IMG/VR virus record: IMGVR_UViG_3300024502_000010
Span: 62,001-126,000 of that record
Length of the DNA stretch: 64,000 bases
Reading direction: 5' to 3' (one strand)
Shown here piece by piece: positions 1,165-19,587 of the stretch. Made by a program: the position numbers and the translations under genes. The notes beneath the pieces were generated by a model that was not told the DNA's origin, did no database searches, and saw only the letters and a list, made by a program, of their open reading frames with translations. Every line of letters starts with the position of its first letter. The stretch's first letter is position 1.

Positions 1165-1831
1165 TCAACCACCCTTTTCTCTCAAACTTCGCACAAGATA
1201 CTCAGTAAATTGCTCCATCTTCTCAGGAACTACAGCAGCAGGGCGTTGATTGATTACATTTTTAAGTGCAGTCATTTCATTAAACTCTTCGTCTGTAAGT
1301 TTTTTATTTCCCTTTGAAGGAAGAGTCATAAGTTTTGCTCCCGTGATTATGTCCATATCCTAACACTATTTAAGGGGGTTGTGTGGTTTCTTAATATTCT
1401 CTTTGGGATTGTTTAACAGTTCTTAATCGTTGAAGAAAGAACCAAAACTACCACGACTTCCTGGTTTTCTATCTTCCAACATATCCATCAGTTCTTCGAT
1501 TTTTTTGCAGTTTTCCATATCAAGAAGAACTTGTGACAGTTGTTTTACAACTAATGGTTTTTCTGATGTAGATGCAACACGAATAGCAGCACGAAGATGT
1601 GATTCTGCTTCCAAGATATGATCTAAAGTTTGTTTACTTAGTGCCATTTAATCGGTCCTCGCATTTAGTGTAAAAAGTCCCTTCAACATAACAGGACTTA
1701 CCAGCTTCGTAGTATCTTACCACAGATGGTTTGGGTTGGTCAAGAGCACAATATCCTTGATTAGATAATGCACTTTCGGCACATAACATTAAAGCAGCGG
1801 GTGCAAGAAGTTTGATTGTATACATCAACAC
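1165..1831 (-). CDS. Three small hypothetical proteins (1165-1356, 1423-1647, 1634-1831)
   Basis: Co-oriented, closely packed ORFs from the track; no recognisable domain. Confidence 0.6.
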
Positions 1832-2391
1832 TCATCCATTCCAAGTGGTTTAGTTACTTTACGCAACTCAAAACTACCGTCCCCACGGTCAATCCACTCC
1901 ACAGTATCACCTTCCTTCAGATTTGCTGCTTCTAATAAATCATCAGGGAAACTGATAAAATATTCTGTCTCATCAGTATCAGTATCTTTACATTCTTCAA
2001 CAGGAAGTTGCCACTTTACTACTCTATCTTTTACTGGATAAAGGTCTCCATCTTCAGTTATATGGACTTTGGATTTTTCTGAGCGATTATCAATATCTTC
2101 CCAAAAATCATCCCAAGCACTTTTACACTCTGGTGAAGAGTTATCTTTATCACAACTCAAGATTTCATTTAGATAATCCTTATATTTGTTATTATCAACA
2201 CCACTATTCAAAAGTCCAAGAAGTTCATATGCTTCAGATGTTTTTTGTTTATATGTGTAGTAATTATCTTTTACTACACCAACAATTACATCATAAATCT
2301 CTTTTGGTGTTGCTTCACCAGAAGACATTGCATCATGCATCCAATTTTCAAGATTCTCAAGAGAATACTTTTTGTAATCAAAGTCAGTCAT
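1825..2391 (-). CDS. Hypothetical protein with C-terminal AbrB/SpoVT-like swapped-hairpin domain
   Basis: C-terminus ISFPDDLLEAANLKEGDTVEWIDRGDGSFELRKV fits the AbrB pattern; start reassigned to MTDFDY at 2391. Confidence 0.6.
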   Translation of the reverse strand: MTDFDYKKYSLENLENWMHDAMSSGEATPKEIYDVIVGVVKDNYYTYKQKTSEAYELLGLLNSGVDNNKYKDYLNEILSCDKDNSSPECKSAWDDFWEDIDNRSEKSKVHITEDGDLYPVKDRVVKWQLPVEECKDTDTDETEYFISFPDDLLEAANLKEGDTVEWIDRGDGSFELRKVTKPLGMDEC

Positions 2392-5300
2392 TTCTTGGTT
2401 TGTGTTTAGAGCAATCGTGGCAATAGTAAGAGAAACCATCGCGGAAGTATTTTACCACCTGATAGTGGTCTTTGTCAAGTGGTTTCACCACTCCACACTT
2501 ATCACAAATCCTTGTCTTTCTTGATAGACTTTCGAACTCGTTTGAGTTCCTTGAGTTCCATTTTAATATTTTTGTAAGCAGCGTCAGCATCTAATTTGCC
2601 TCCCATTTCCATTGCAATAATTACATCGACTCTTGTGCCAAAGTGTGCAAGAGCCTTTTCAAAATCATCGAGTTCATACATCGTTTTTATTCCAATTTTC
2701 AAGAGTCAGAATATCTATGCGTGCATCAACTGCATCAATAGAATTAGAGAGTTCATAAAAGCAATTGCTATTCTCTACACTTTCCGCTTCAAGTGCTTCA
2801 ATTCTCAATTCAAGTTCAAGTAACTTTGAATAAACATCATCTTCAACAAAAATTTCTGTTGAAGTAAAAAACCATTCAATAAATTTTCTAATCATTATCA
2901 AGAAGTCCAACAGATTTTAAGTAACGCCTATATGACATAAAACGCCCCAAAGATGGTTGTCCTGGAGCATTTAATTGGTGGCAGATTTCGCAGTAACACA
3001 ACCACTCATACCAAGGAGTAGTCTTATCAAGAACATGATAGGGATATTCTACAGCAGTTCTTTCCAAAATTGTTCTCCTTTTTGTAACGCTAATACGACA
3101 GTTGTATGCTCTCTTGCGTGTCTATCGAGGTCTTTTTCATTAAAGTAAATGTTAGACCTTTCTACAGCACAACGAAAGATATTTGCCCAAAATTGTTGAT
3201 TAGGATTCAGTCGCATTTTCATTCTTATTGAATCCAAATTTAATCTTTTCTTCTTCTAAACGAAGTTTGTGTGCAAGATTACAGACCGTTTCCATTACCT
3301 TGAGCGTGTCTTCTGTTGTGGCATTTGTAGGCATACGACTATTAACAATGCGAAACAAAGGAAAGAATTGTTCTGCTGCTTGCTGTACTTCTTCAGGCGT
3401 TAGGGGTTTATTGTTCATTTTTCAAATCAGGATGTGGTGCATAAAGAGGTCCGTTGTAATTACCAGCAAACTTTGCAAGTTCTTGAACTGCTTTTACAGT
3501 CTCTTCTGTCTCAACCCATTCCCACGAATTGCCGTTTTTATCTACAAAATTGCGAATAGTCATAGTTTTCCTCCAACAGTTGAATCATAAGTTTTATCAG
3601 GTGATTTGTCAAACTCACCGTCTTGTTTTGCTTTTAAATACCAACGAGTAGCAGTTACACATTGGTCTTCAGTTAGTGATGTGATAATCCCACCACCATC
3701 TGGATAATGTGATTGCCAAGTACCCCAACTTTTTTGCTCCACATAAAAAGCATCGTCGTCATAAAACTGTTTACTCATAATGATTCAGTTGCCTCTGTAG
3801 TTCAATTCGTGTGGAGATTAGTTTACTGTATAGAAAGTCTTGATACTGATTTCCTTTTAGTAGTTCAGTAAGATTATCAATCTGCATCATAGCAAGAATG
3901 AGTTTGGTTTTATCATCCATCGTCTTTCAGTTTTTGAAGATGTTCCATAATGACTTTGATGAAGTCTTTTTCAGTCCAGGTGTTGAGAATACTTTCCGTA
4001 GGAGAATTTTCATCCCAGGAGATATCGAAAGATCCATCTTCATTTTCAATTACCTGTATCATTTTTTAGACTTTGTAGAGCGAGTAGTGTTTCGATTGGA
4101 ATCCACGCTGGGTTTTCGTTTGCGAACTGTACTTGAACTTCCGTCACTTTTTGGTTTAGACTTTTGTTCCACACTTCTCTTGTGTTTTTTACTGGACTCA
4201 ATGGGTTTTCCATCACGATAATCAATCTTTGTTGTCTTACTATCCAGTCTATACCTTTCTAGATATTTTTGCAAGTGTTCTTCGCAAGAAAAATAACAAA
4301 CCGTAGGATTTTTCTTTTCACCAAACTCTAATCGGTATGGGTGATTCTCATGAGGAAACAGTTCAGTAGAAATCATCGTGTTCCAAACTCATAGTCCATA
4401 AGTCTACCATACTTGAAGTGGATTTTACAGCGAGGCCAGTCAGTCCATTCACCGTCCCAAGTTGGAGGATAAACCTCAACATATTTGGTAATCATACAAG
4501 GACTAATTTTTCCGTGATTGCCATTGGGAACCCACTTAAAGTTACACCACAGATGTATAGAATCATATCCTTCATCACCTTCTTTGAGTTCTACAAAGTC
4601 TGCAGTGTGGGAGAAATCAATATGATACAAATATCCGTGAGGGTCTAACCAATAGTGAGACATTGTGCCACCTATTCCGTCTTCAATATCTTTGGTGTGT
4701 AGTTCTACATTTGTGAATTGTTCTCCAAGATCATAGGAAGACCTCAAATAGTCAAACATCCCCATCACTCTTCTCCCCAAGTTTAATAGGAAATTCTTTA
4801 TCGTTTAAATCATTATACAACAGATTGGCAAAGATTTCATATGCAGGTTGTCTAGATTCAATTGCGGATGAAGTAGCAACACTCCACATAATACGCAATT
4901 CGTTTTTATCAGGTAATGTCTTCATTGGGTAACTTTTCATTTAAATCAACTTCAATATCACCAACAAGGTCATCAAGTTTATCAATCATTTCTAGGGTAA
5001 ATGGAATTGTTTTAACTTTACCAGTCTTTACATCTTCTGCCATTTGCTGCAGATGCTCAAGAAACTCCTTGGGTAAAGTATCGTCATCACCTAAACATTG
5101 CCAAAACCAAGACAAACACTCTTCATAAGGGTCGTCATACCACATCAGCGCATAGTCCTTATAGTTTCCAGAAATCAAATCACGCCAGATACGAAATGAT
5201 CCGCGAATGTTTTGCCAACCAGTAAACCAGCAGTGGTTAATGTAGTAATCGATCCAAGTCATTAGAGATAATGCGGTTTTTCAGTATCAAATTGGTAAAA

Positions 5301-8300
5301 CTTTACGTCTTTCATATCAAGACACATACGGATAGTTTCATGCTCTCTGTGCTCCCTATCTGTTCCTTTGTACATCCCTCTGCGTTGATAGGCACAACAC
5401 CAGATATTGTAGTAGATTTTAGATTTCTCGTTCATCTTCCCAAGGTGCTTTACGACTTAATAATCTAGCAATCTTTTCATTATATTCTGGTGGTTGATTG
5501 ATTGCTTCTACAAGAGCATCATATGCTTCTTCTGATACATAAATGACTGGTGGTTTTTGGTCTAACCTCAACTTGCGTTCAGGTGAAATAGTGATATTGT
5601 ATGGGTCATCATAAGGATAGATGTACTCCATATACCATCCCAAAGATAAACCTTCCCAGAACTCACTATATCCCCAATCATCCCCGTCATTATAACAATC
5701 CAGACAGTTCCAGAAGTTATGGAATCCATCAAGAAAGAGTTCCCATTTCGTTGGATTTTCAAATCTCACGGGGTTTCATCACTCCAATAGTACCTCAGTT
5801 TATCACCATCCGCAGAAATATTCAAGTGATAGATTTTATCGTCTTCAGTATACACACCAACCCATAAGGTGCGTTCATTCATACTTTCAAGATGAAACAT
5901 TTGAATGTCTTGAAGTACAATTTCGTCTGGGTTTTCAGTAAATCTACTCACTCTACTTCCTCATAAGCATCTTGAATCATCTGTGCAAGTTCCATAACTT
6001 CCAACTTCATTTCAGAAGGTGCTGTCTTTGCAATCTCATCATAGAACAAAGTAAGGGCAGTTGTCAATAGAACCAGTTGGCGTTTTGTGAAGTCCATTAT
6101 GAGAAGTTATAATGAACACGGGTGTAGAAGTCTTTGAAGCAACTTCTATTAAGGAGCTTCATCATTGCTGGAGGAATGTAGTATGAATATTCACTGAAGA
6201 AATCTTCTTTACTGAGAAATCTGAGACCATGAAGATACCAAGTGCCAAACTGCTCATGAAATGCCCTTACAGCACGATATTGCTGTGTAGTACAAGCAAC
6301 ATACTTATTGGTAGAGTTTTCAAAATCTTCTTTATGACCAGGATTTGCCTGTGTCATCATAACACACACAGTTTGACCCTCCCCTGTGCCGAAATATTCG
6401 GAAACCATATACACCCAATGCTCATCCACTGGGAATACATCACGATGATACTTCTGCTCATATTCTTTCATACAAGCATCGGCAACCAGTTGGAAGTTTT
6501 CTTTTTTCTTTGCTTGCAGTTCTTCAATTAGTTCTTCATGCTCAATCTTACGAAGTTGTTTCATTGCTTCTGAATGTTCTTCAATGAAATCAATAGCAAT
6601 CTTTAATACTTCATTCTCTTTTTCTCGTTTTGCCGCTTCTTCAAGCATTTCTTCGTGGGTCATTTCTTTGATGTGCAACTGTGTTTCTGGAGTTTGGACT
6701 TTTCCCCAAGAACTATCATCAATTGTGAGAGTTTCTTTTCCTTTATCATAAAACCTCAACTTACCATCAGTCATCGTAGATTTTCCCTAATCATTCTAAT
6801 ACACTCATTCCACTTATAACTGTTAGTTTCGTGTTCTTTCGGCAACCAATCCTTTACGATATTCACAATCTCATTTACCAGAACATCTCTGGATTGTGCG
6901 AAGTTTCCATAATCAACCCACTCTTCTAGTTTATTATAAAGAGTTGGTTTTTTATTCATAAGTTCTCGGATTTTCTGTTTGCCGTATTCTGTGAGTTCTT
7001 GTTTATTGGTGCGGAGTTGTTGGATTTCTTCATCAGTTAGTCCAATCACCCAAGGCATATCTTCATTAGTCATTGTGATACAGGTATAAAATCCAACTCA
7101 AATAGTTGGTTGTTCTCATTACAATAATAAAGTTTAGCATCCTCATCGTCAGGATAATACCAGAGTAGTTGGTTTTTGAGATTATACTTATCTGGTTGTA
7201 ATGGTTTTTTACCTCTTCTCAACTGAAAGATACCACCATCCTCCATAGCAGGATGATTGAGATTGATACCTTTTGCTCCGTCAAATCCTGCGTTTTTTGG
7301 TTTCATCGTTCATTATAAAATACAAATCCAGTTGAGGTTTTTTCGTCGTAGTAATAATACTCTTGAAACACTCCGTTTTCAAAGTGTTCAATAGGTTCAA
7401 GTTCATCACTACCCGTTGAATAGTAACAGTCTAACACAAAATCAGAATATTCACCAACAAAACCACAGAAACGGTCAGGAAACTTTGAAATACTTTTGTC
7501 TGGGAACAGTTCGTAGTATGTGTCTAATACTTCCTGTCCATATTCTTCTAGGATTTCTTCAAGTGTCATAAGGTTGCTGTGGGTCTTTTTTCCAAACTTC
7601 TTTGTAGATAATCCAAGGTTCTTCTTGGTGGGTCATTTGAGCAGACCAATGGTATCCATTCTCATCAACAGCATCCAGATAATGAATGCGTGTCTTTGGG
7701 TCAATCACTCGTGTGATAGTTTTGAATTTTACTCGTTCAGTCATTTTACTCCAAGCAAGTCCTTTTCAAAATCAGTCAAACGAGCAAGAAGTTCTTGTCG
7801 TTTTTGTTCTTTGATTTCTTCTTGTCGTTTTTCTTCTAACTTTTCATCAAGAACATCCATCATATAATCAAAACTATAACATCTCTTATCCCAATTAGTT
7901 TCACCTTGTTGATTGATGAATACTGTTTCATCAAATCCTTCTGGGTGGTACATTTCGTAGATACGAACTATATAATCACCATCTTTGTCCTCACGAATTT
8001 CAACACTTAAATCAAGTTGCTTTGCTTTGGAAAAGAGTTTGAGAAGTTCAGTTGCTTTGATAGTCATTTCAGTTCTCCATAAGAAAGTGTTTTGATTTCT
8101 TCTTTACTCAAAGGTTCTGTAGGATAATATCCAGAAGGATAATCATTCATACCAGCATCAAAGATAAACACAGGAATGTCTGCTTTTTTACAGAATTCTT
8201 TGAACTTTTCTCCATCCAATTCAAACTTACCAACATACTCAACATTTGGATACATATCCCAAGATGCTACAAGTCCTTCTGGATAATAACTCCACTCAAA

Positions 8301-8786
8301 CTCATCAAGTAATTTGATAATATCTTCTACAACTTGAATGTGTTCTGGATTAGTGTAGATGCGTCCGTATCCTTTGTAAGTGAAGGCAGTCATTTCAAAT
8401 GAGGTTCAATTTGTGTTTGAAGTTTAAGTTGTTGAAGCAAATCACGAGCAAATGTTATTTCACCATACTCAAATCCCGCATCAAAAGCATCATCATAATT
8501 TCCAGCGTCTGAAGGAGAATAATCATCACCACATTCATCATAACAATGCTTACTGTCTGCAGTTTCTTGAAGTTTGGTGAGAAGGAATTGAAGTTTTTGT
8601 GTATCAGTCATTTCAGTTCTGGTGTTGTTTGAGATGGAGTTGGATACATTCCATAACATCATCAAGTGTGGAAGCACTACCCTCATAGTAGTAATCCATA
8701 TTCATTACATCTGTGACTTTGAGTTTGTAATAAAAATCACCATCAGATGAATACTGATGAATGATGATGTCAGTTTCGTAGTGCAT
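2384..8786 (-). other. Array of about 25 co-oriented small hypothetical CDSs (e.g. 3560-3778, 4059-4376, 4373-4780, 4909-5262, 5419-5769, 6097-6774, 6771-7073, 7070-7306, 7303-7569, 7559-7744, 7741-8067, 8064-8393, 8390-8611, 8613-8786)
   Basis: Contiguous minus-strand ORFs, many with 4-bp ATGA stop/start overlaps; several ORFs under 60 aa fill the gaps; no recognisable domains. Confidence 0.75.
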
Positions 8787-8807: not shown

Positions 8808-8866
8808 ATTATACAACCAAAAGGAGCACCTGTGGGATGCTCTTGTGCCAGTTTAGAAAGTGTCAC
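8808..8866 (-). promoter_or_regulatory. Hairpin promoter cassette 1 (palindrome + stem-loop + -10)
   Basis: TATAAT 8808-8813; GAGCA/TGCTC hairpin; 22-bp quasi-palindrome GTGCCAGTTTAGAAAGTGTCAC 8845-8866; -35 position reads CCCACA. Confidence 0.7.
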
Positions 8867-9426
8867 TTGTCGTTCCAAGTAAAGTCAAGAAGTAGCTTAG
8901 TAAAGTATCTCACAATCACATTTGGTTTCTTTTCCAGATACACTTTGATGTTTGGTTTGATGTCCCAGTATCCTACCACATCTTTACCAATTCTAAATTC
9001 TGTAGTCCAATCTACAGCACTGCTCACACCAAGAGTAGAACAATCTAAATTACCTACTGTAAGTCTGACTGGGAATTGTCCGTGTTCCTTCGCATACTTA
9101 AAGTTCTCAATAATTCTATTGAACTTTTGATTGTAGTAATACTCTTGATGACATTTGAGTTCAGCAAACTTATGCTTGATACTCTCAATATGTTTATCAA
9201 TCTTCTCATCAAACTCTTGTGAGATTTCTTCTAATGACTTGCGTGGTAGTTCAAATTTGATTTCTTGTGCTTCGTTTGGAATTGTGAAGTATTCTTTGAG
9301 GAGTTCATACTTTTCGTGGTCTTCTTCAGCATAAGAATACAAATTCATACACTCAAAGACATTCTTTACATCTGTGAGTGTTTTGATTTTACTTACATCT
9401 AATTTATGGTTTAATGGTTCAATCAT
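8863..9426 (-). CDS. Hypothetical protein
   Basis: 187-aa ORF coupled to 9423-9731. Confidence 0.7.
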   Translation of the reverse strand: MIEPLNHKLDVSKIKTLTDVKNVFECMNLYSYAEEDHEKYELLKEYFTIPNEAQEIKFELPRKSLEEISQEFDEKIDKHIESIKHKFAELKCHQEYYYNQKFNRIIENFKYAKEHGQFPVRLTVGNLDCSTLGVSSAVDWTTEFRIGKDVVGYWDIKPNIKVYLEKKPNVIVRYFTKLLLDFTWNDK

Positions 9427-9731
9427 TTCAACCTCAACTTCAACTTCTCAACACAATCATTCCAACCACAAGCATATCTATCATCACCACCATCTTCATC
9501 AGGCAACCATCTTTCAACAATATCACAAATAACTTCTCTATTTACAAACTCCAATTGTTCTTTACAGAACATCTCATAAAGTGTTTGTGGTTTTGGTTCT
9601 TCTACTTTTTGATACTTCACACCATCAATCATTATGGTTTCTTCATCAAGTTTTTGATAAACTCTCATAGTATAATCCACAGCACATCTTCCGTATTTTT
9701 TTCTTTCTACGATGATTTCTGGTTCAGTCAT
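9423..9731 (-). CDS. Hypothetical protein (WLP...GWNDC family)
   Basis: 102-aa ORF; C-terminal motif shared with 9733-10308 and 6771-7073. Confidence 0.7.
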   Translation of the reverse strand: MTEPEIIVERKKYGRCAVDYTMRVYQKLDEETIMIDGVKYQKVEEPKPQTLYEMFCKEQLEFVNREVICDIVERWLPDEDGGDDRYACGWNDCVEKLKLRLK

Positions 9732-9732
9732 T

Positions 9733-10308
9733 TCAGTTTTTCCTCTTGATTTCGTTCAAACAATCATTCCATCCTTGATTATATCCCATCTCATCTTCTT
9801 CATATTCTAACTCATCAGGCAACCATTCTTCACCCACATAAGTATAATTTCCCTTTCGCACCTCATTAAACCAAAGTCCTTCAAGCAGACGACGAGTTTC
9901 ACCATCAGTAATACGAACCAGCATCATACCATCAGCAGGTTTCTTTTTCTTATACCAAATAACATCAGTTGGATATTCCAGACGATAATAATTCTCACCA
10001 TTATAAGAGACAACCTCATACTTCCCAGAGTTTTCAAGATACATTCTTGGTTGAGATTTATGTGTCTCAATCTCTTTGAGGAGTTCAAGTTTCTTTTGAA
10101 GCACTTTGATTTCTGCTTCTGTTTTTTCAATATCAGATTTGAAAGTCATAGATTTAAAATAAGGAGTAGCATCCATCACACCATCTTTGATTGCTTGTCT
10201 AAAAGCATCACGAAGTCCATTTGCGACTTCTTCGGGGTGTTGCTTCCTTGGTTCCCAGTTTGTTGATTGTCCTTCGTTGATTTCAGTTGGTTTCCAATCG
10301 TTATTCAT
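9733..10308 (-). CDS. Hypothetical protein (WLP...GWNDC family)
   Basis: 191-aa ORF directly downstream of the promoter at 10331. Confidence 0.7.
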   Translation of the reverse strand: MNNDWKPTEINEGQSTNWEPRKQHPEEVANGLRDAFRQAIKDGVMDATPYFKSMTFKSDIEKTEAEIKVLQKKLELLKEIETHKSQPRMYLENSGKYEVVSYNGENYYRLEYPTDVIWYKKKKPADGMMLVRITDGETRRLLEGLWFNEVRKGNYTYVGEEWLPDELEYEEDEMGYNQGWNDCLNEIKRKN

Positions 10309-10330
10309 TTAAGTGATTACTCATAAGGTC

Positions 10331-10389
10331 AGTATACAACAAAAAAGGTGCCCTGTAAAGGCACCTTGTTCCAGTTTGTAAAGTGTCCT
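10331..10389 (-). promoter_or_regulatory. Hairpin promoter cassette 2
   Basis: TTTACA (10354-10359)-N17-TATACT (10331-10336); -35 in the loop of an AAGGTGCC/GGCACCTT hairpin with T tract; palindrome GTTCCAGTTTGTAAAGTGTCCT 10368-10389. Confidence 0.8.
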
Positions 10390-11174
10390 TATACCACTCT
10401 CACTCGTTTAGTGATGTCTATTCCATTTTTCTTTTGATAATTTGAAAGAGCACCTGCGTTTGTGATAAATCCAGTTTCAAGACACATCCATCTTTGAGAA
10501 CTTGTTTTTTTACCTCCTATTTTTCCACCTCTTCTTCCATTTTCCGTCATTTTTTCTTTGCTTTGTCCGTGTATTCCAATTCCAAGTTCATATGTTCTAT
10601 TTCCACACTTTCTACCATTTTCAACCATCTGGTCTTTGGTTCTTCCGTGTATTCCTATTTTAAGTTCGTATGATTTTTTTCCTCCTTGTTTCCCATCTTC
10701 ACTCATCTGTTCTTTTGTTCTTCCGTGAACTCCAACACCAAGTTGATATACTCTTTCACCTCCTTTTTTTCCATAAATTTTACCAGTTCTTTTAGCATTT
10801 TCACTTCTTTGCTCTTTGGTTAGTGAATGAACTCCTAAACCAAGTTCATAACATTTATTTCCACTTTCACGCAAAACTTTTAGAGATACTTTACCACCAC
10901 AACTTTCATTTAGACACCATTTATCTGTATTAAAAAATGGTTTTATCAATCTTTCTTCAATTTCTTGTGCTTTCAACCAACCTTCATCCGTATAATCAAA
11001 AAATTGAAGTATTTGTTTCTTTGGTGTATAAAGTTCCCAACACCACTTGTTTGTTGTAGGAGAACCCCAGTATTCTTCGTTGAAGTATTTTTCCTTATGA
11101 ACTCCATAATAGTAATATGGAACTTCTTCAAAGGTAATTTTGTATATGTAAATTCTTGGACTTTGGTAAGTCAT
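10389..11174 (-). mobile_element. Free-standing GIY-YIG-like (Seg-type) homing endonuclease with repeated C-terminal modules
   Basis: N-terminal YIYKITF...YYYYG, conserved E (EIEERLI) and LN; four ~25-aa G-x-x-YELGIGIHGRTKEQM-like repeats; late promoter upstream. Confidence 0.75.
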
Positions 11175-11181
11175 CGTTATT

Positions 11182-11278
11182 CTACAGAAACCGCATTAGT
11201 ATTTATAATAGAAAAGGTGCCCGAAAGCACCTAATCTGTCCGTAGAGAATTGCGGTTTCTATAGACATTTTATTTATA
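11182..11278 (-). promoter_or_regulatory. Two T4-type late promoters, a 14-bp inverted repeat and a UUCG terminator upstream of the homing endonuclease
   Basis: TATAAATA at 11200-11207 and 11271-11278; arms 11182-11195 and 11251-11264; minus-strand AGGTGCT-TTCG-GGCACCT-TTT hairpin at about 11212-11232. Confidence 0.75.
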
Positions 11279-11280
11279 AG

Positions 11281-14200
11281 TCATTTTTTACTCCAACTAC
11301 CTCGTTCATATAATGCTTCTGTAAGTTTGTTATGCCATTCCAATCTGGCATCTCGTTGTTCTTCGTATTCTTCGTCAGTAGGAATGGGAGCAAGTTTTGC
11401 CCACCAACTACCATCAAGTTTCCATAAGGTATTGTCGGAACATAATACCATATCACCAGAGATTTGTATAGGTTTTCTTTCAGTCATCACAGGTTTCCTT
11501 TGCTATTTTTTTAATCCAAATAATATCAAGTTTGTTTGCCTTTTTTACTACTCTACCATATTTACTATAACGAAGTCCCCCACCATTTCCCAAATCAAAT
11601 ACAAAAGGACGGTCATCATCTGGATAGGTGGGAGAATTTCTAATTTTACCATAAAGAGTTGTATCGTCTCTGCGAACAACTTTGACGACATAATCAACAC
11701 ATTCTTCAAGATTAACAATTTCAGTCATCTTGCCCTCATCGCAGCAATCACAGCATCACGGGCACTTTTACCTTTTGCTCTACTCATAGGAAATCCACTA
11801 TTCATAAAAACCCAATCGTGTTCTCCATTCATTTTAGGAGAACACATCTTGAATTGATTGAGTAGAAATTCAAGGATTTCTGTGTCTGTTGGTTCAGTCA
11901 TTTTCTTCATCGGGTAGTTTTTCATTCAAATCAATACCATCTAAAACTTTATCAGACCATTTTAGCACATTCTCAATCAGTTTATCATTAACTTCTTTTT
12001 TCTTTTCCACAAACTTTTCAATCAGTTCATCATTAGGGTCGTTGAGGATTTGTTTTACTGGGTCTTTCTCTTCAATCATCAGTTTGATTTGTTTGAGATT
12101 ATCATAAAGTTCTTTATTGAAATCATAACATTCAGTCAAATGGTCTATGTTGTTGTCCTCAAAGTTAGTTTCCTCACGGATTTCCCAAGACAAACCATCC
12201 ATATCTGCTGCGGTTTCTGTGAGAAAGTATTCAAGTGTTTCAAGTAAATTCATTTTCTAATTACAGCAATTACTTTACGATTTGGATACTTCTCTACAAT
12301 TATATCACGAGCACTCTCATAATCAATAGCATCCTTTACGGTTTCATAATACACAGTTTTATCTGCATCATCCCAAGTTTGAACTTCGTAAGTCATTTCT
12401 CCTCCCAATTTGCTCTCACATCTTTATAAGGTTCTGCTTTTACTACATTATGAATAGTAGGAGTAGTGCTTGAAGCAGGTGGAATATAAGGAGTGCTATA
12501 AAGTGGTGGAGATTTACTCAAATACTCTTCAATAATATTACAAGACCATCCATCCTCATAGAATTGCTTACCATAGAAAACAGCATCTTCCTTATTTGGA
12601 AAGGAAGCAACATAAGTTTCGTTGTGATAGAGTGAATAAACTTTCATTTCACATTCTCCCTTGCTTTGCGAGCAGCATCATAAAGTTCCCGAAGTCGTTG
12701 AGACCTATCCTTTCGTTTATTGACTTGTTCTGGACTATTATACCACACACTATCAGTTCCGTGTAATGGGCAATCTGGATTGAGGTTTTTGCTATTGGAG
12801 GTCTTGGTTCCTATTTGAATGTAAGAACAGGTGCATTTAGTCATTTTACAGAACTCACAAATACAGGAACTTCACCACAAATGTTAGTTGCGGAATTAAT
12901 CACATTATAAGACTTCCTACATTCTATCACAATCTCATAAGATTTCAAGAACATCTCTCTGTCCTTTTGAGTATTGTAAGTATTCAGTAGTTCCATAGAA
13001 AGGAAATAACCAGTAATGATGAGAAGTGGAATGATGAAGATAAAGATAAAGGGTTTCATTTCACTCATAGTAGGACATATCATAACTACCTTCATTATAA
13101 CCCATTTGAAAGATTTCTTGGGCAAACTTCACAAAGGCATCAAAGTTTCCAGAATACTCCCAACCATCATTTTCATCCCAATCTTCTTCAAAGTGTTCTT
13201 TTACAAGTTTGATGACTTCTTCATCTAAAATCATAGTCATTTTTCTCCTGTTCTAAAACATCACGGGCACGGTCAGCAATCTGTCTCAAACTAATGCGAG
13301 GGTCATTATAAGATGTCGGAGTCCAATTATCACACCAACTATCAAGTTCAATAATAACTCGTTCTAATGCTGATTGAGTTTTAGTCATCACCAATCCAAC
13401 TCCACATAAATGCTCCACCCCAAATTATTAGGCAGATTATCTTTCAGGTATTCTAACATATAATCCTGAAAATCATAAGCAGTTGGAGAACATTCTTCAA
13501 TCAACACACCATACTCCAAATCCTCTTCGTGAATACTATATTTCACCCACACATCAACCACTCGTAGGTCAGCATAATTTACACCACCAAATCGTTCTGT
13601 GGAATTCTTGAGTTCTTCAAGTGCCTTTGTAGCAACCTCCTGAATGAGTGTGAGGTTCTTATTAAGTGTTTCGTTCATCGTATCCCCGCATCAAATAATT
13701 TTTTTAGTTCATGATAAACAAGTTTTAGTGTATTATCAGTTTCTAAATTTACATCTCTCAAAATCCAATAGAGTTCTTTTGCTTGTTGTTCTGTTAGTTC
13801 CAAGACATAAGATTTTTTGATTTCAATCATTTTCAATCTCCTCTACATTTACATAAGGAGCAGTTTTCCATTCACTCCATTCCTCACAATCATAAAGGAT
13901 GGGAGGACATAAATTACCAGAAGCATCAGTAGTAAAAATATGATACCGATACTGAATGTCTGGTTTCACTCCCAGTTCATTCTCAACGATACGAAGTTCA
14001 ATCATTTTCCAAGTTCCTTTTGAATACGATACTCACACCATTCTGTATGATTTTTAAGTTCTCCGTTGATTTGTGGGTCACTTATCTTACAATAAGAACA
14101 GCAGTAATAAGGATTACCACCACCAATAGGTTCTTTTGGATAGTCGTTATAATATTGGTTCATTTCACAAAATCTCCAATCACAGGAACTTCTCCACAAA

Positions 14201-15853
14201 TCTCATTCACTCTTACTACTGTTTGGTCTTTGAGTGCTTGACGACACTCCAAGTTTTTATTGTATGTTTGTTGGAATAATACTCGTTGTTGTTGGGCATC
14301 ATAGGTGATGATAGCACCAGCAACGATTGCAATAAAAAATACAAACAAAACTGCCCAATCAATTCCATCAAATTTCATACTTAGCCTCCACTTCTTTCAC
14401 CCGTTCCATAAAACTATCTTCACCATGATCACCTGAATACAGATAATCAATATGCCTCATAATCTCTGCCATCTTTTTCATTTTTGGCAGTTGTTCTTTT
14501 AGATATTCGATAGTTTCTGGTTCAAAAGCAGGATAATACTCTTCACCATAGTATCCACCATCTTCACGTTTCTGACCATTTTTGAGAATCTCATCTTCCA
14601 ATTCATCAGCAAACTGATAAACTTTGTAGTAATCGTAACCACAGTTACCAAAATGTCCACCACTCATTTTCCAAGTCCTACTGGGGGTTTGATGTCGTTG
14701 AACTCATCATACAGCATCCTGGCAAAATGGATGTTAGGTCTTGTGCCAGTTTCCAAACTGGTACTGGTTGCAACAGTCCACATTATATCAAGTTCTCTTT
14801 TGTCAGGTAGAGGTTTAGTCATCTTTCAACTTCATATAATCTTTTGCTTGATAGAACAACTCATCACGCCAGTTTCTCCCCCAGATATCAAAAGTAAATC
14901 CTAAACGACCAAGAGAGAATAGAAAGGAAAACAGTCTACCATATCCCATAGAGATTTGAAGATAAGGCCACTCAATCCACTTACCATATTCACCAAAATC
15001 AACTGCAACTTGAAGCAGTGAATATCGTTCAGTAAGAAAGAGTGATAGGTAGAACTCTTTACCATAATCCTCTCTTACACCCCATTTTGCGACTTGAAAG
15101 ATTTTCATTGGTTTAGTTCCTCTGCAAGTCGAATCATATCACCTTTATCCAAAACAATTCTACCATCTTGAGCCGTAAAGAACTGCACTTTTTCTGCAGC
15201 AAGACAAAGAATAGCAGAAACTAACTTTTCTTCAGTATCAGCACCGAAATTATTTCGGTGTTCCCATACTTCATTCATAAATTCTTGTGCTCGTTCAGTC
15301 ATTTTACTTTACCGTGAATAGGACAATCAGCATTAACCCACTTGCGTTCTTCAGGCATCTCTTCATTATCCATTACAGGACACTTACAACCTTTCTCAAC
15401 TGCTTCAGGAGACCCAGGAACAACACCATTCCATTCTTGATGAGTCATTGCTGACATTTCCTCATCGGTATATTGAGGATTTTCGGGTTGCTGGCAGCGT
15501 GAAAGTTTTGCTTTCAGATCATAAATCTCATCTTCCAACCTACGGAGTTCTTTAGAATAATCCTCTGACATCATCAGCTCAAACTCTTCCGAAATTTTAC
15601 GCATATCTTCTTCACTACGCATATCATTAAATGCAAGCGAACAAGCACCTTTCATAATACCAATTTCATTATGTCCCATCGTGCGGGCAACAGTTCCAAA
15701 GAAACGGAAGAGTTGAATGGTGTTGATGTCTTCACAGGGAATCTCAAAAGTATAATGCTCCTCAGGAAGAGTTTCGTCGTCATACATTCCAGACGAATAA
15801 CTTGGAGTCCATTCAGTATCAAAAGAAACTTTGAGTTTTGCTGTGTAGGTCAT
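11281..15853 (-). other. Array of about 22 co-oriented small hypothetical CDSs (e.g. 11480-11728, 11894-12253, 12393-12647, 12644-12844, 12841-13125, 13388-13678, 13823-14005, 14002-14199, 14160-14378, 14368-14667, 14815-15108, 15105-15302, 15299-15853)
   Basis: Contiguous minus-strand ORFs with ATGA overlaps; no confident domain calls. Confidence 0.75.
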
Positions 15854-15875
15854 TGCTTTGGATGTCTATGCACCT

Positions 15876-15933
15876 ACTATAAAACCCTTGACCGCGAAAG
15901 TCAAGGGTGAATGGACAGACTTTAAACTGGTCT
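15876..15933 (-). promoter_or_regulatory. Hairpin promoter cassette 3
   Basis: TTGACT (15899-15904)-N17-TATAGT (15876-15881); CCCTTGAC/GTCAAGGG hairpin; palindrome TGGACAGACTTTAAACTGGTCT 15912-15933. Confidence 0.8.
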
Positions 15934-17957
15934 ATGTGGTCAAGAGTTTTCTACATATTCTTCTACAACTCTGCGTATCCTCATCACATTCAGTTAGACA
16001 TTCAAAATATGAATTCATAATTTCGTGCTGGTCTATAAACTCATCTAGCGTATTACCGATTTTTTTCCACCCAGCAAGTTGATTGTAAGAAATTAAATTG
16101 TGCATAATGACCTCCACGCACAAAGAATATCATAATAAAGAGTTTTCAGTTCATTTTTATGACCTTACTATTCTACCACTATCTAGGAGGTTTATGTGGA
16201 TTGCTTAATACAACTTAATTATAAATTGAACAAGGAACTCTGACTCGTTCTCTCCAAGTCCTTACATATCCAGGATTCCATCTATTGCCTGGCACATATT
16301 CTTCACGATACACAACTTCTGTGCAAATTGGTTCTCTATAATAAACTCTTGGTTCAAAAGGTTCCCAAAACTCTCTCCAAGTGATAGCACTTGCGGGTAG
16401 AGTTGCAAATGGCAAAAGTAAAAGTAAATATTTCATCAGTCTCTTTGTCGCCAATCGTCTGGTTTGTCTCCTGTGAAGAAATCAATAATATCATCAGCTC
16501 CATTGAATCCAGTGCGGTGATTTGAAGGGTCGGGATCACCCAAATCCAATGCGTTCATAAAGTCATCTAAACTTCCTTCTTGCATATCTGGATTTGCAGC
16601 ACGGCGTCTTGCTTGCCTTAGAAGTGTTGCAGCGGAACGATTTGCTTTTGCCAACTTCTCTGCCCAAATCATGTCGCTTAACTCTACAGATTCGCCTTTT
16701 ACAATTCGCTCACAGATTGCTTCAAGGCGAAGACGGTATTGAGTGGAGAGCATATGTATTACTCAGATAATGTTTATTTATTTCTTGATTTTAACTCCTG
16801 TTGCAATTCCTTCGCAAGTTTATATGCTCTTCTCCACATAAAATACTTTACAATTGGATTTGCTGGATTATGTAAAATCCACCACTTTGTCTTTTCATAC
16901 TGTACTCTTGCTAGTTGAGTTAGCATATAAAATGCCCTCGCTACTGATTGGTCTGTAGCAATAAAATACAAAACAAAAGCAAATATAATCAACCAAAAGG
17001 TATAAGAACTCATTGTCTCAATGTCTTAAGATATTGTAGGACTTGTTCACGAACTGCCATAAGTTCATTAAAACACTTTTGGTTATGAGCACAGTTGCGA
17101 AGTTCAGGATCTGGTTTCAATACACTTTCCTCAAAGAGAGTCAGTCCACGATTCCACTTGTCAATTTGAGATTCTTCATTCATTGTTTTACTACTTTAAC
17201 GGGACAGGAAGGAATAACTTTGCGGATTTCTTGAATAATTTCTGTTCTTTGAACTTCAGTTAATCCCACAACTTTAGAAATGCGTTGAATCACACTCAAT
17301 GCGTCAGAGCAAGTAATAATGGTTGCAGTAAGAAATACAACCATGGTTTTCTCCTATTCTACTACTATTTAAGGTAGTTTATAATTTTTTAAGAAATTAA
17401 GTCATGTCGAAGGCAGACCAACTTACCAATCAAAACACCATAGCGTAGCAAAACAGCACGATCTTCATGCTCTTTTGATTCTTTCTTAACCAATCGAATT
17501 AGTTCGATAATATCGTCCAAATTCAAGTCTGTATCTTGAATGTTATGTTCAGTAACTTTCATCAGTCCCAACTAATATTTTCAAGAAGAACACCTGGCAT
17601 TACATAAGTCCAACCACTACCACCAACTTTATAATCAAACTTATATTCAAATTTGTTGTGACTATCCCAAGTCACATATCCTTTCTCTTTATCAAACCGT
17701 CCTTTGATAGTCAAACCAAACTTATTGGAGAAAATGTTACGAGTTCTCAATGCTCCACCAGTTTCACGAGTTTCAATGACTTTACAAACATCATCATAGG
17801 TTTGAACACCATACTCTAAAATACAGTTTGTTTCATATACAAAAGGACGATAAACTTTTACCTTAGGAACTACTGGTGCAGACTGTGCAAAAACAGGAGA
17901 ACCAAACAATAGTGCAGCAAGAACAATCAGTTTTTTCATCCAACAACCCTCCAACAA
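15932..17957 (-). other. Cluster of small hypothetical CDSs (15932-16123, 16215-16454, 16436-16753, 16774-17013, 17010-17183, 17180-17344, 17389-17571, 17562-17957)
   Basis: Packed minus-strand ORFs; several have N-terminal hydrophobic/signal segments; late-promoter-like TAAATA near 16775 and 17367. Confidence 0.7.
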
Positions 17958-18247
17958 ACGACAGCGTTACCTTTTTTTACAGAAGAAATGTGAGCAAAAG
18001 CAGCATAAGAAAGATCCAAATCAGCATGTGAGTATGGACCACGATCATTTACACGAACAATAACTTGTTTACCATTGTCTTGATTTGTCACCCGTATGCG
18101 TGAACCCATAGGTAGATAAGGGTGAGCTGCAGTCCAACGATAAGCGTCAAACCGCTCACCATTCGCAGTAACTTTTCCATGAAATCCGTCTCCGACTCCA
18201 TAGTATGTAGAAATTCCACAAGTCAACGCAGCAATCAATCCAATCAT
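17936..18247 (-). CDS. rlpA: RlpA-like lytic transglycosylase (double-psi beta-barrel) with signal peptide
   Basis: STYYG..FHG..TANGERFD...TAAH..LPMGS.IRVTN..NGK.VIVRVNDRGPY and DLS..AF motifs. Confidence 0.9.
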   Translation of the reverse strand: MIGLIAALTCGISTYYGVGDGFHGKVTANGERFDAYRWTAAHPYLPMGSRIRVTNQDNGKQVIVRVNDRGPYSHADLDLSYAAFAHISSVKKGNAVVCWRVVG

Positions 18248-18462
18248 TTCTCAATTTTCCAATGTTCATTACCAGACTTGGGAATCCAAGTGCAGTATTG
18301 TCGATTGATAGAAACCAAAAATAACATGTTATCAGTTTCTTGTTCCACTTCCATTGTATGAAGTGATTGCATGATATTCACAAAGCGATTCTTTGCCTTG
18401 GAACTTAGCGGTGTTACACTTACAAATTTCTTCTTGGTCTTAGGAGCTTTCATAGTGATCAT
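18244..18462 (-). CDS. Hypothetical protein
   Basis: 72-aa ORF downstream of the promoter at 18487-18515. Confidence 0.65.
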   Translation of the reverse strand: MITMKAPKTKKKFVSVTPLSSKAKNRFVNIMQSLHTMEVEQETDNMLFLVSINRQYCTWIPKSGNEHWKIEK

Positions 18463-18486
18463 AGTTTTTCAACCTCCACAAAGGTC

Positions 18487-18515
18487 ATTGTACAGAGTTT
18501 TCAGTGTTGTGTCAA
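18487..18515 (-). promoter_or_regulatory. sigma70-like promoter
   Basis: TTGACA (18510-18515)-N17-TACAAT (18487-18492). Confidence 0.8.
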
Positions 18516-18926
18516 GTAGTCTAAGTATTCATTGAAAAGCACTTCTTCCATTTGAAATGCTTGTTGTTCCCATGGTTGGTCTTCATAGTCCGTCTCAGAG
18601 TGGTCTATGCCCCTCCAGTACCTCTTTCCGTGCTTATCCTTCAGAGCACCCATAACATGCTGATAAACATGCCAGAGTTCGTGTAGAAGGGTTCTGGTGT
18701 AATGGTCAGGGTCCATATGATTGTGTAGTTCAATCTCAAAGCATCTTGGTCTCCAATTACAACCAATTACTCCTACCCAACCATAAACTCCATCGCGTAA
18801 CATTCCACGATGATTGACAATGATTTCAAGTTTATATCTTGGAAGGTGTTTGGAAATGAACCAATCTACAACTTGATTGCAACGACGCTTGCTATAGTTG
18901 TATCCACTGGTGTATAATGTAAGCAT
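18501..18926 (-). CDS. Zincin/SprT-like metallopeptidase domain protein
   Basis: TLLHELWHVYQH (HExxH) followed by PWEQQAF (third ligand E). Confidence 0.7.
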   Translation of the reverse strand: MLTLYTSGYNYSKRRCNQVVDWFISKHLPRYKLEIIVNHRGMLRDGVYGWVGVIGCNWRPRCFEIELHNHMDPDHYTRTLLHELWHVYQHVMGALKDKHGKRYWRGIDHSETDYEDQPWEQQAFQMEEVLFNEYLDYLTQH

Positions 18927-19053
18927 CAGAATAGTGCATTAAACACTGCTTCGGTTACTTTGGTTGCCCAATGAGCAACCCATACAAAACTGCCGACAAA
19001 AATCAGTCGGTTCAGATTTGAGTACCTCATTCGTTTCTCAGGTGTCTTTAGAC

Positions 19054-19111
19054 ATTATAAAACCTCCCAAGTCGGTTTTGGGAGGTCAGTGGACAGTTTT
19101 ATGAGTGTCTA
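19054..19111 (-). promoter_or_regulatory. Hairpin promoter cassette 4
   Basis: TATAAT 19054-19059; ACCTCCCAA/TTGGGAGGT hairpin; palindrome TGGACAGTTTTATGAGTGTCTA 19090-19111; -35 position reads CCCAAA. Confidence 0.7.
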
Positions 19112-19119
19112 CCTCAAGT

Positions 19120-19587
19120 TCAATTTGGAATTAAATTTAGTAAAGATTCTAAATCACTTATTGAACTGAACGAATATCTGTTTTTCAGAGGAAATTCTGG
19201 AAAGACATATTCTTCAGGATATAAATCTTCGTTAGAAAGAAAACGAAGATTTGATCTATATTCAACTAAACTTGAATATTCCGCATCGGATAAAGATGTT
19301 TCTCCATTAGAACTAGATTGTTCAGAATGTCTTTGAACTAACCAATCAGTTTCAGTTAAAACTAAAGAAACTTTAGTTTTTAATTCTGTTTGATAACTTT
19401 TCTTAAATGTGTTGCGATTAAATTGTTCAACCTCAGTTTCGGAGAATGGAACTACTTCCCCATCAACAAGTTTATAAAAACTATGACCTTCATGTTCAGT
19501 TGGAATTAAATACCAACCATCACCTTCTTGTTCAGATGATACTTGAACTGTACTAATATTTTGTTCGTTAAATTGTACGTATGCCAT
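19120..19587 (-). CDS. Putative tail-fibre assembly chaperone
   Basis: L..TDWLV.R.....YR..LR.L motif typical of fibre chaperones; directly downstream of fibre genes. Confidence 0.6.
   Translation of the reverse strand: MAYVQFNEQNISTVQVSSEQEGDGWYLIPTEHEGHSFYKLVDGEVVPFSETEVEQFNRNTFKKSYQTELKTKVSLVLTETDWLVQRHSEQSSSNGETSLSDAEYSSLVEYRSNLRFLSNEDLYPEEYVFPEFPLKNRYSFSSISDLESLLNLIPN

What the first reader, a model, noticed from the sequence alone, without database searches (positions are those of the whole stretch)
8808..19111. 22-bp palindrome at fixed spacing upstream of four hairpin promoters (PeSL-like cassettes with an operator)
Seen: a quasi-palindrome of consensus (G/T)(T/G)GNCAGTTT-NN-AAA(G/C)TGTCNN at 8845, 10368, 15912 and 19090. 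Each sits 30-31 nt from a -10 hexamer, with a GC stem-loop between that covers the -35 position. Two copies have good -35s (TTTACA, TTGACT); the other two share a non-canonical CCCA(C/A)A. The promoters at 1125, 18487, 33614, 59079 and 62946 lack the palindrome. Known: promoter-stem-loop (PeSL) cassettes mediate modular shuffling in T4-type phages. Inference: a dimeric-regulator site centred near -54 defines a promoter class, and the repeats could also be recombination points for gene-block exchange. It matches neither NtcA nor CRP consensus.
Basis: partly seen in the sequence, partly recalled or inferred. Interest (0 to 1): 0.66.

Follow-up and report, generated by a model that had tools for sequence, protein, structure and literature searches.

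The report
Cyanophage early-promoter palindrome with nested terminator
The repeated palindrome is real: it is a conserved upstream element of the early-gene promoters of T4-like cyanophages, often with a terminator hairpin packed between it and the -10 box. It probably binds a still-unidentified dimeric protein, and it appears to be an element already reported for marine cyanophages rather than something new.

Summary
The window lies in a 205-kb T4-like cyanophage that carries psbA and psbD.

**What is there.** All four sites read on the minus strand in this order:
- the stop codon of the upstream gene;
- a 22-24 bp imperfect palindrome, core G-M-C-A-S-TT-N4-AA-CTG-K-C;
- 31-33 nt that usually hold a GC hairpin plus a T-run;
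- a TATAAT-like -10 box.

**Statistics.** A matrix trained only on relatives finds 8 such cassettes in this genome, against 0.17 expected. All 8 are on the coding strand. Five lie in the window, including an extra, doubtful copy at 14742-14765.

**Conservation.** 173 distinct cassettes occur in about 120 related freshwater phage loci. The palindrome and its spacing are constant; the hairpin (68%) and a recognisable -35 (31%) are optional.

**Spread across the family.** The element or a variant occurs in S-SRM01, S-CRM01, P-SSM2, S-PM2, P-HM2, P-TIM40, Syn9 and S-CAM3. In P-HM2 it marks the published earliest-expressed gene cluster.

**Hosts.** It is not enriched in about 100 host-family genomes.

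**Verdict.** This is most likely the binding site of a dimeric, probably phage-supplied factor that controls early promoters. The hairpin is a nested terminator. I believe, from memory only, that it matches the "novel early-gene regulatory element" of Doron et al. 2016. The recombination (PeSL) idea is only weakly supported.

The parts
8844..8867 (-). Palindrome copy 1 (24-mer). Its distal edge contains the TGA stop of the upstream 187-aa ORF (8863-9426).
   Evidence: 28.3 bits with the independent matrix
8824..8842 (-). GC hairpin followed by a T-run, terminator-like. CCCACA occupies the -35 position in its loop.
   Evidence: 7 pairs, 4 GC
8808..8813 (-). -10 hexamer TATAAT of copy 1. Downstream ORF is 8390-8686 (98 aa).
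10367..10390 (-). Palindrome copy 2. It abuts the TAA stop of the 261-aa homing-endonuclease-like ORF (10389-11174).
   Evidence: 27.4 bits
10331..10367 (-). Hairpin (10345-10367) with T-run, -35 TTTACA (10354-10359) in the loop, and -10 TATACT (10331-10336). Downstream ORF is 9733-10308 (191 aa).
   Evidence: terminator-like, 10 pairs; promoter-like, 10 of 12
14742..14765 (-). The palindrome is near-perfect, with TATGAT (14706-14711) at the same spacing. It lies inside a small conserved ORF and has no strong hairpin, so function is doubtful.
   Evidence: 25.6 bits
15911..15934 (-). Palindrome copy 3, the weakest. Its first three bases are the TAG stop of the ORF at 15932-16123.
   Evidence: 16.5 bits. 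Orthologous copies in relatives.
15876..15908 (-). Hairpin (15884-15908) whose 5' arm carries -35 TTGACT (15899-15904), then a T-run and -10 TATAGT (15876-15881). Downstream gene is 15299-15853 (184 aa, phrog_6458).
19089..19112 (-). Palindrome copy 4. It is the first cassette after the tail-fibre-like late gene (19120-19587) and opens the early region.
   Evidence: 20.2 bits. Conserved in 28 of 31 orthologous loci.
19054..19085 (-). Hairpin (19063-19085) with T-run and -10 TATAAT (19054-19059). Downstream are a conserved 34-aa ORF and the 141-aa ImmA/IrrE-like gene (18501-18926).
   Evidence: hairpin about -15 kcal/mol
18487..18515 (-). Comparison: a sigma-70-like promoter (TTGACA-17-TACAAT) without the palindrome.

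Best explanation
The palindrome is the upstream element of the early-promoter class of T4-like cyanophages (Kyanoviridae).

**Anatomy.** It is a 22-24 bp imperfect dyad spanning about -65 to -42, centred near -54. The core is G-M-C-A-S-TT-N4-AA-CTG-K-C, followed by 'aca'. It sits at a fixed distance (plus or minus 1 bp) from a TATAAT-like -10 box.

**Proposed mechanism.** A dimeric DNA-binding protein sits on it, next to where sigma region 4 and the alpha C-terminal domains of the host RNA polymerase lie. That protein governs transcription of the small early genes. Activation or recruitment at promoters with a weak or absent -35 is the favoured reading.

**The hairpin.** The GC hairpin plus T-run that often fills the 31-33 nt spacer is an intrinsic terminator for the preceding transcription unit. 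Terminator and promoter are interleaved in about 65 bp.

**The factor.** The protein is unidentified. Because putative host genomes do not carry the site, it is more likely supplied by the phage than a host regulator.

**Shown versus inferred.** Shown here: sequence conservation, fixed spacing, strand bias, family-wide spread, and association with early genes in a related phage. Inferred: protein binding, the sign of regulation, and the origin of the factor.
For: **Enrichment and orientation**
- 8 sites against 0.17 expected, all on the coding strand.
- Strict pattern: 4 hits against 0 for the control.

**Phylogenetic footprint**
- The site upstream of the 141-aa gene is kept in 28 of 31 distinct orthologous loci, whereas the hairpin sequence and the upstream flank change freely.
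- 173 distinct cassettes occur in 865 kb of relatives. Spacing is 32 nt (92 cassettes), 33 nt (67) or 31 nt (14).

**Protein-type symmetry**
- C3/G16, A4/T15, T6-7/A12-13 and G1/C18 are mirrored.
- Positions 2 and 5 vary without compensation.
- One palindrome feeds divergent -10 boxes.

**The palindrome is the constant part**
- A hairpin of -8 kcal/mol or better is present in 68% of cassettes and absent in 18%.
- The -35 position matches TTGACA at 4 of 6 or better in only 31%.

**Family-wide spread**
- Strict-pattern counts: S-SRM01 12, S-CRM01 7, P-SSM2 5, DSL-LC03 5, S-PM2 3, P-HM2 3. Controls give 0-1.
- A variant occurs in Syn9, P-TIM40 and S-CAM3.

**Early expression**
- In P-HM2, 8 elements lie in 35.7-39.8 kb.
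- That stretch is the Early (A) cluster PHM2_056-074 of Thompson et al. 2016, S2 Table (PMC5082946).

**Not a host site**
- 0 hits in 5 Cyanobium/Synechococcus genomes.
- 3 of 61 and 10 of 101 host-family genomes have a hit, against 16 and 22 for the controls.
- With up to 3 mismatches: 20 hits against 55 for the control in 12.9 Mb. Syn9 gives 15 against 2 and P-TIM40 gives 23 against 4.

**Terminator reading**
- Hairpins are far more stable than shuffles, -10.9 against -4.1 kcal/mol.
- They are detected as terminator-like.
- The S-CRM01 record annotates them as Rho-independent terminators.
Against: - There is no direct evidence of protein binding, of transcription start sites, or of timing in this genome.
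- If a factor is needed at time zero, a phage-encoded one must be injected with the DNA, which is unproven. No family-wide DNA-binding protein was found.
- The only Pfam-supported DNA binder in the early region is a 204-aa AbrB-type protein at window 1825-2439. It has homologues in only a few phages, yet the element occurs in many phages without it.
- A centre near -54 is not a classical activator position.
- Close relatives S-SM2 and SynMITS9220M01 carry very few copies, so the element is dispensable in some lineages.
- Copy 14742 is intragenic and may be conserved as coding sequence.
Confidence: 0.6

Rival explanations
1. Shut-off operator. The promoters fire on their own through the -10 box, as many picocyanobacterial promoters do. 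The palindrome binds a phage early or middle protein that turns early transcription off at the early-to-middle switch.
For: - A phage-encoded factor fits the absence of the site from host-like genomes.
- It removes the need for an injected protein.
- The -10 boxes are near consensus.
- Early-region genes include candidate small DNA binders of the AbrB, PrlF and RHH types.
Against: - A site centred at -54 does not overlap the core promoter, so simple occlusion is unlikely.
- The plus-or-minus 1 bp spacing to the -10 is more typical of elements that work together with the polymerase.
- No family-wide candidate repressor was found.
Confidence: 0.2
2. Host transcription factor site. A conserved picocyanobacterial regulator, for example a CRP/NtcA-family protein or another dimeric regulator, binds the palindrome, and the phage hijacks it for immediate-early expression.
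For: - Early genes must be read before any phage protein is made.
- The element occurs in phages of Prochlorococcus and of marine and freshwater Synechococcus.
- The 5-8-5 geometry resembles that of CRP-family sites.
Against: - It does not match the NtcA or CRP consensus.
- The site is not enriched, and is if anything depleted, in 5 putative host genomes and in 61-101 genomes of the host family, compared with a reversed-pattern control.
- The inner sequence differs between phage lineages.
Confidence: 0.12
3. Recombination module (the PeSL idea). The conserved cassettes mainly serve as short homologies for gene-block exchange, and any regulatory role is secondary.
For: - The cassettes lie between small ORFs of the variable early region.
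- In some relatives an inserted gene comes with an extra cassette: L005/L008, L013, L031, L032.
- Homology between relatives starts exactly at the palindrome of the first cassette.
- PeSL precedent: PMC2839356 (search listing) and PMC4122927 (read).
Against: - Copies in this genome share only 49-74% identity over 64 nt.
- Other insertions carry no cassette: L017, L028, L034.
- Strict spacing to the -10, the coding-strand bias and the link with early genes are not explained by recombination.
Confidence: 0.05
4. RNA-level signal. The palindrome acts in the 3' end of the upstream transcript, just before the terminator, for processing or stability.
For: It lies immediately after the upstream stop codon and before a terminator hairpin in most copies.
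Against: - The half-sites do not covary as a stem would; positions 2 and 5 give A-G and C-C clashes.
- The element keeps its distance to the -10, not to the stop codon.
- It persists where no hairpin exists and works in both orientations.
Confidence: 0.03

Closest known systems
Early-gene regulatory element of T4-like cyanophages (Doron et al. 2016, ISME J 10:1437; Syn9 and P-TIM40). The paper is not held here; its content is recalled from the abstract only.
   Same: - It is found upstream of early genes of cyanomyoviruses.
- It is unlike host sigma-70 promoters.
- That paper reports it as abundant and conserved among T4-like cyanophages.
- Syn9 and P-TIM40 carry a variant of the present palindrome at the same distance from a -10-like box.
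   Different: - I could not compare the published logo with this one.
- The freshwater clade has the inner sequence TT-N4-AA-CTG and very often a terminator hairpin in the spacer.
- Syn9-type copies read AGTG-K-CACA and mostly lack the hairpin.
PeSL / PmSL cassettes of T4-type phages (Arbiol et al. 2010, PMC2839356; Comeau et al. 2014, PMC4122927)
   Same: - They are compact terminator-plus-early-promoter cassettes between small ORFs of hyperplastic regions.
- PmSLs pair an activator box with a -10 box in place of a -35 box.
   Different: - In a PeSL the stem-loop lies upstream of a canonical -35/-10 promoter and is preceded by an AT-rich stretch.
- Here the stem-loop lies between an upstream palindrome and the -10 and overlaps the -35 position.
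- No palindrome is described for PeSLs.
- Copies here are too divergent for easy homologous exchange.
Phage activator sites at promoters that lack a -35 box: the T4 MotA box at -30, and the phage Mu Mor/C dyad sites centred near -43.5 (from general knowledge)
   Same: - A good -10 box, a poor -35 box and a fixed-distance upstream site for a phage-encoded activator.
- Mor/C sites are imperfect dyads bound by dimers.
   Different: - Different position (-54) and different sequence.
- This is the early class, not the middle or late class.
- Cyanophages lack motA/asiA (stated in PMC5780444).
- No Mor/C-like gene was identified here.
CRP/NtcA-family operators (TGTGA-N6-TCACA; GTA-N8-TAC)
   Same: A dyad of about 22 bp with 5-bp arms separated by 8 bp, upstream of promoters with a weak -35 box.
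   Different: - The arm sequence differs (GMCAS).
- The centre is at -54, not -41.5.
- It is absent from host genomes.

Membership tests
PeSL (promoter-early stem-loop) cassette | Strong sigma-70-like promoter with both -35 and -10 boxes | tested here: inconclusive
   The -10 box is near consensus in all copies. The -35 is good in 2 of the 4 sites (TTGACT, TTTACA) and poor in the other 2. Across 173 cassettes only 31% match TTGACA at 4 of 6 or better.
PeSL (promoter-early stem-loop) cassette | Stem-loop terminator located just upstream of the promoter | tested here: not met
   The stem-loop lies within the promoter, covering the -35 region and ending 1-4 nt before the -10. The PeSL definition is taken from PMC4122927, Fig. 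3 legend.
PeSL (promoter-early stem-loop) cassette | Located in hyperplastic regions between small non-essential ORFs | tested here: met
   All copies lie in the 54-81 kb block of small minus-strand ORFs. Gene content between cassettes varies among relatives.
PeSL (promoter-early stem-loop) cassette | Copies mediate recombination (indels at cassettes, mini-circles) | tested here: inconclusive
   Some insertions in relatives bring an extra cassette and others do not. Intragenomic copies are 49-74% identical. Mini-circles cannot be tested with these tools.
Cyanomyovirus early-promoter element | Conserved motif at a fixed distance upstream of the -10 and start site of early genes | tested here: met
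   Spacing is 31-33 nt in 173 cassettes. In P-HM2 the elements coincide with the Early (A) cluster. Timing in this genome itself was not tested.
Cyanomyovirus early-promoter element | Present across T4-like cyanophages, including Syn9 and P-TIM40 | tested here: met
Cyanomyovirus early-promoter element | Sequence identity with the published motif logo (Doron et al. 2016) | not testable with these tools
   The paper is not held. Papers that cite it give no sequence.
NtcA / CRP operator | Consensus GTA-N8-TAC or TGTGA-N6-TCACA, centred at -41.5 | tested here: not met
   The position matrix shows arms GMCAS / STGKC and a centre near -54.
Host regulon operator (any host regulator) | The same site is enriched in host genomes | tested here: not met
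   counts are at or below the reversed-pattern control in the genomes searched.
Intrinsic (Rho-independent) terminator, for the hairpin part | GC-rich stem-loop followed by a T-run on the transcribed strand | tested here: met
   One search lists copies 1-3. 49% of 173 cassettes have a hairpin of -8 kcal/mol or better plus at least 3 T. The S-CRM01 record annotates the same hairpins as terminators.

The most novel reading that the evidence does not exclude
T4-like cyanophages direct the host polymerase to their early promoters through their own dimeric factor, either carried in the virion or made at once. This factor would recognise the -54 palindrome and stand in for -35 recognition. It would be a counterpart of T4 MotA or Mu Mor, but unrelated to them and acting at the very first stage of infection. 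Its gene is still unknown.
Probability: 0.3. Interest if true: 0.7.

Novelty: new member of a known kind. Interest (0 to 1): 0.42.

Why it matters
Cyanomyoviruses are among the most abundant viruses in oceans and lakes, yet how they start their transcription programme without T4's MotA/AsiA is not settled.

This locus, with more than 170 related cassettes, gives three things:
- a sharp, testable definition of the upstream element: core, spacing and tolerated variation;
- evidence that the hairpin and the -35 box are optional;
- evidence that the site is foreign to host genomes.

Together these narrow the search for the binding factor.

It also gives a simple marker for annotating early transcription units in uncultured cyanophage genomes, and a compact terminator-promoter part for cyanobacterial genetics.

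Tried and rejected
- **RNA or DNA stem for the palindrome.** Rejected: the half-sites do not covary.
- **Consensus hairpin fold on 24 orthologues.** It predicted nothing because the stems are out of register. I replaced it with per-sequence folds against shuffles.
- **AbrB-type protein (window 1825-2439) as the binder.** Homologues occur only in S-SRM01 and DSL-LC03, with partial matches elsewhere. The element is present in many phages without it, so I dropped this protein as the general factor.
- **Pfam and PHROG scans.** About 40 early-region proteins of this genome and of P-HM2 gave no family-wide DNA-binding domain.
- **Sigma-54-like reading of CTGGCAC.** Rejected on position and because many copies read CTGTCC.
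- **LexA, NrdR, LacI-type and IHF consensus sequences.** Compared from memory; none fits in arm sequence or spacing.
- **Literature.** Doron et al. 2016 could not be read. Sullivan et al. 2010 and the PeSL paper read here (PMC4122927) do not mention the palindrome; the 2010 PeSL paper (PMC2839356) appeared only in the search listing and was not read. One literature search returned nothing relevant.

Full report
**Context.** The window is bases 62001-126000 of a 204,829-bp viral contig with 36.7% G+C. The contig carries psbA and psbD. Its protein relatives are T4-like cyanophages of the family Kyanoviridae: S-SM2, SynMITS9220M01, S-SRM01 and P-SSM2. The phage psbA is closest to freshwater Cyanobium and Synechococcus genomes. 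Genome region 50-81 kb is a run of small ORFs on the minus strand. It follows tail-fibre-like genes and has the layout of a T4-type early, hyperplastic region.

**Observation.** Read on the minus strand, each cassette runs in this order:
- the stop codon of the upstream ORF, which overlaps or abuts the palindrome in three of the four copies;
- a 22-24 bp imperfect palindrome;
- 29-30 nt that form a GC hairpin ending in a T-run;
- a TATAAT-like hexamer.

The hexamer 17 nt upstream of the -10 is TTGACT or TTTACA in two copies and CCCACA or CCCAAA in the other two. This hexamer lies inside the hairpin. The consensus scanner lists three of the hairpins as terminator-like and two of the sites as promoter-like.

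**More copies.**
It sits in a small ORF that is conserved in relatives and lacks a strong hairpin, so I regard it as doubtful.
- Further copies lie at genome positions 54010, 58547 and 202549, with a weak one at 57445.

**Statistics.**
- A matrix trained on the genome's own sites is circular. I therefore rebuilt it from 161 sites found only in relatives.
- With a -10 required at the right distance, that matrix recovers 8 sites in this genome at 12 bits or more.
- Shuffles give a mean of 0.17 and a maximum of 2 in 100 runs. All 8 sites are on the coding strand.
- A strict pattern gives 4 hits against 0 for the reversed control.

**Conservation in relatives.**
- Two proteins encoded just downstream of cassettes were used to fetch 123 related loci from IMG/VR, mostly from freshwater samples.
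- The cassette ahead of the 141-aa gene is present in 28 of 31 distinct orthologous loci. The palindrome and the -10 are conserved. The upstream flank is unrelated, and the hairpin arms change while usually still pairing.
- Three orthologues have lost the hairpin but keep the palindrome and the -10 (L011, L033, L035).
- In all, 173 distinct cassettes were collected. Spacing from the 18-bp core to the -10 is 32 nt (92 cassettes), 33 nt (67) or 31 nt (14).

**Shape of the element.** The position matrix reads G-M-C-A-S-T-T-n-a-a-a-A-A-C-T-G-K-C-a-c-a.
- The mirrored pairs are C3/G16, A4/T15, T6-7/A12-13 and G1/C18.
- Positions 2 and 5 vary without any compensating change in their partners.
- This is the signature of a protein site with degenerate half-sites, not of a stem.
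- The half-site nearer the promoter is the better conserved.

**What is optional.**
- The spacer folds much better than shuffled versions, with a mean of -10.9 against -4.1 kcal/mol.
- 68% of cassettes have a hairpin of -8 kcal/mol or better, and 49% have in addition a T-run of at least three. 18% have no hairpin.
- The -35 position matches TTGACA at 4 of 6 or better in 31% of cassettes and at 2 of 6 or fewer in 58%.
- The palindrome and the -10 are therefore the constant parts, and the hairpin and the -35 are optional.
- The S-CRM01 GenBank record annotates the hairpins inside two such cassettes as Rho-independent terminators. It annotates nothing for the palindrome.

**Spread across the family.**
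- The strict pattern (core plus -10) counts 12 in S-SRM01, 7 in S-CRM01, 5 in P-SSM2, 5 in DSL-LC03, 3 in S-PM2, 3 in P-HM2, 2 in DSL-LC02, 1 in S-SM2 and 1 in P-TIM40.
- It counts 0 in Syn9, S-CAM3, S-8S53 and SynMITS9220M01. Controls give 0-1.
- A search allowing mismatches shows that Syn9, P-TIM40 and S-CAM3 carry a variant. The outer arms are the same (GACAG ... GTG-K-CACA), the inner sequence differs, and the distance to a TAT-type hexamer is the same.
- The closest isolate, S-SM2, lacks the element at the orthologous promoter.

**Link with early expression.**
- No reads could be obtained for this genome, so I used published data for P-HM2.
- In a 16-kb stretch of P-HM2, all eight elements fall between 35.7 and 39.8 kb.
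- Six lie just ahead of PHM2_060, 061, 064, 066 or 068, genes of the cluster PHM2_056-074 that Thompson et al. 2016 class as Early (A). One reading lies on the non-coding strand in the 061/062 gap. One precedes a Mid (B) gene, PHM2_053. Only about 20 of 242 genes are Early (A) (PMC5082946, S2 Table).
- One P-HM2 palindrome has -10 boxes at the right distance on both sides, within this early cluster. A DSL-LC03 copy does the same. This fits a symmetric binder.

**Who binds?** The site is not a feature of host genomes.
- The core pattern has 0 hits in five Cyanobium/Synechococcus genomes chosen by psbA similarity.
- Symmetric versions hit 3 of 61 and 10 of 101 genomes of the host family, against 16 and 22 for the reversed controls.
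- With three mismatches allowed, the five genomes give 20 hits against 55 control hits in 12.9 Mb. Phage genomes of 0.18 Mb give 15 against 2 and 23 against 4.
- This speaks against a host regulon and for a phage-supplied factor, but I could not name one.
- The early region encodes a 204-aa protein with a C-terminal AbrB/MazE domain (window 1825-2439). Its homologues are confined to S-SRM01, DSL-LC03 and a few partial matches, whereas the element is far more widespread.
- Other early proteins gave no DNA-binding family.

**Two promoter classes.** The same genome has sigma-70-like promoters without the palindrome. Most show a TTGACA-like -35, often inside a hairpin, 17 nt from the -10 (window 1125, 18487, 33614, 59079, 62946). 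As I recall its abstract, Doron et al. (2016) reported for Syn9 and P-TIM40 that a novel element controls early genes, that host-like promoters drive middle genes, and that these elements are abundant among T4-like cyanophages. The present data fit that picture. I could not read that paper, so the identity of the two motifs is inferred from my finding variants in both phages.

**PeSL comparison.**
- Published PeSLs have, in order, an AT-rich stretch, a stem-loop, then a canonical -35/-10 promoter (PMC4122927).
- Here the stem-loop is nested between an upstream palindrome and the -10. This is a related packing solution but not the same architecture.
- For recombination the evidence is thin. Copies in this genome are 49-74% identical over 64 nt.
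- In relatives, some inserted genes come with an extra cassette (L005/L008, L013, L031, L032) and others do not (L017, L028, L034).

**Verdict.**
- The palindrome is best read as a protein-bound upstream element of the cyanomyovirus early-promoter class, with an optional nested terminator.
- Activation by a phage-supplied dimer is my preferred mechanism (overall confidence 0.6). A shut-off operator and a host factor are the main rivals.
- As a kind it is most likely already known. This is a new, well-resolved freshwater member.

Noticed in passing
window 18501-18926 (-): The first sizeable gene of the early region (141 aa) is a small metallopeptidase-like protein. Pfam gives weak SprT/DUF6782 hits, and the S-SM2 and P-SSM2 orthologues are annotated with PF06114, ImmA/IrrE-like. 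It is conserved across cyanomyoviruses and is preceded by a conserved 34-aa hydrophobic ORF. ImmA/IrrE proteases normally cleave repressors, so a host target is conceivable.
   Followed up: partly
window 1825-2439 (-): A 204-aa protein with a C-terminal AbrB/MazE (SpoVT) DNA-binding domain, an arrangement like cyanobacterial CyAbrB regulators. Full-length homologues occur only in the freshwater phages S-SRM01 and DSL-LC03.
   Followed up: partly
window 4909-5262 (-) and 5419-5769 (-): Two small early proteins with weak, sub-threshold matches to antitoxin-type DNA binders (PrlF-like and TacA/RHH-like).
   Followed up: no
window 267-1118 (-) and 10389-11174 (-): A D12-class (Dam-like) adenine methyltransferase and a homing-endonuclease-like ORF sit in the early region. 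The palindrome of copy 2 abuts the stop codon of the endonuclease-like ORF.
   Followed up: no
L211 28390-28960 (DSL-LC03 record 80.35-80.93 kb): Four palindromes in both orientations are crowded into about 600 bp with almost no annotated gene, amid repeated short 'cataagac'-type motifs. This may be a control hub or an origin-like region.
   Followed up: no
L264 12296 (P-HM2 record 39295): A single palindrome has -10 boxes at the canonical distance on both strands, inside the Early (A) gene cluster near the point where PHM2_064 and PHM2_065 diverge.
   Followed up: partly
L124 19880-19935 (S-SM2) and SynMITS9220M01: The closest isolates by protein similarity have almost no copies of the palindrome. 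The orthologous first early promoter of S-SM2 keeps the TATAGT -10 but has a G-rich stretch in place of the palindrome, suggesting lineage-specific replacement of the control system.
   Followed up: partly
window 17936-18247 (-): An early gene encodes a DPBB/RlpA-like (lytic-transglycosylase-fold) protein of 103 aa. It is conserved in most relatives at the same position.
   Followed up: no
L252, L258, L261 (host-family genomes G068, G038, G104): A few host-family assemblies hold single palindromes with an AT-rich spacer that look phage-like. They may lie on phage-derived contigs binned into those assemblies.
   Followed up: no
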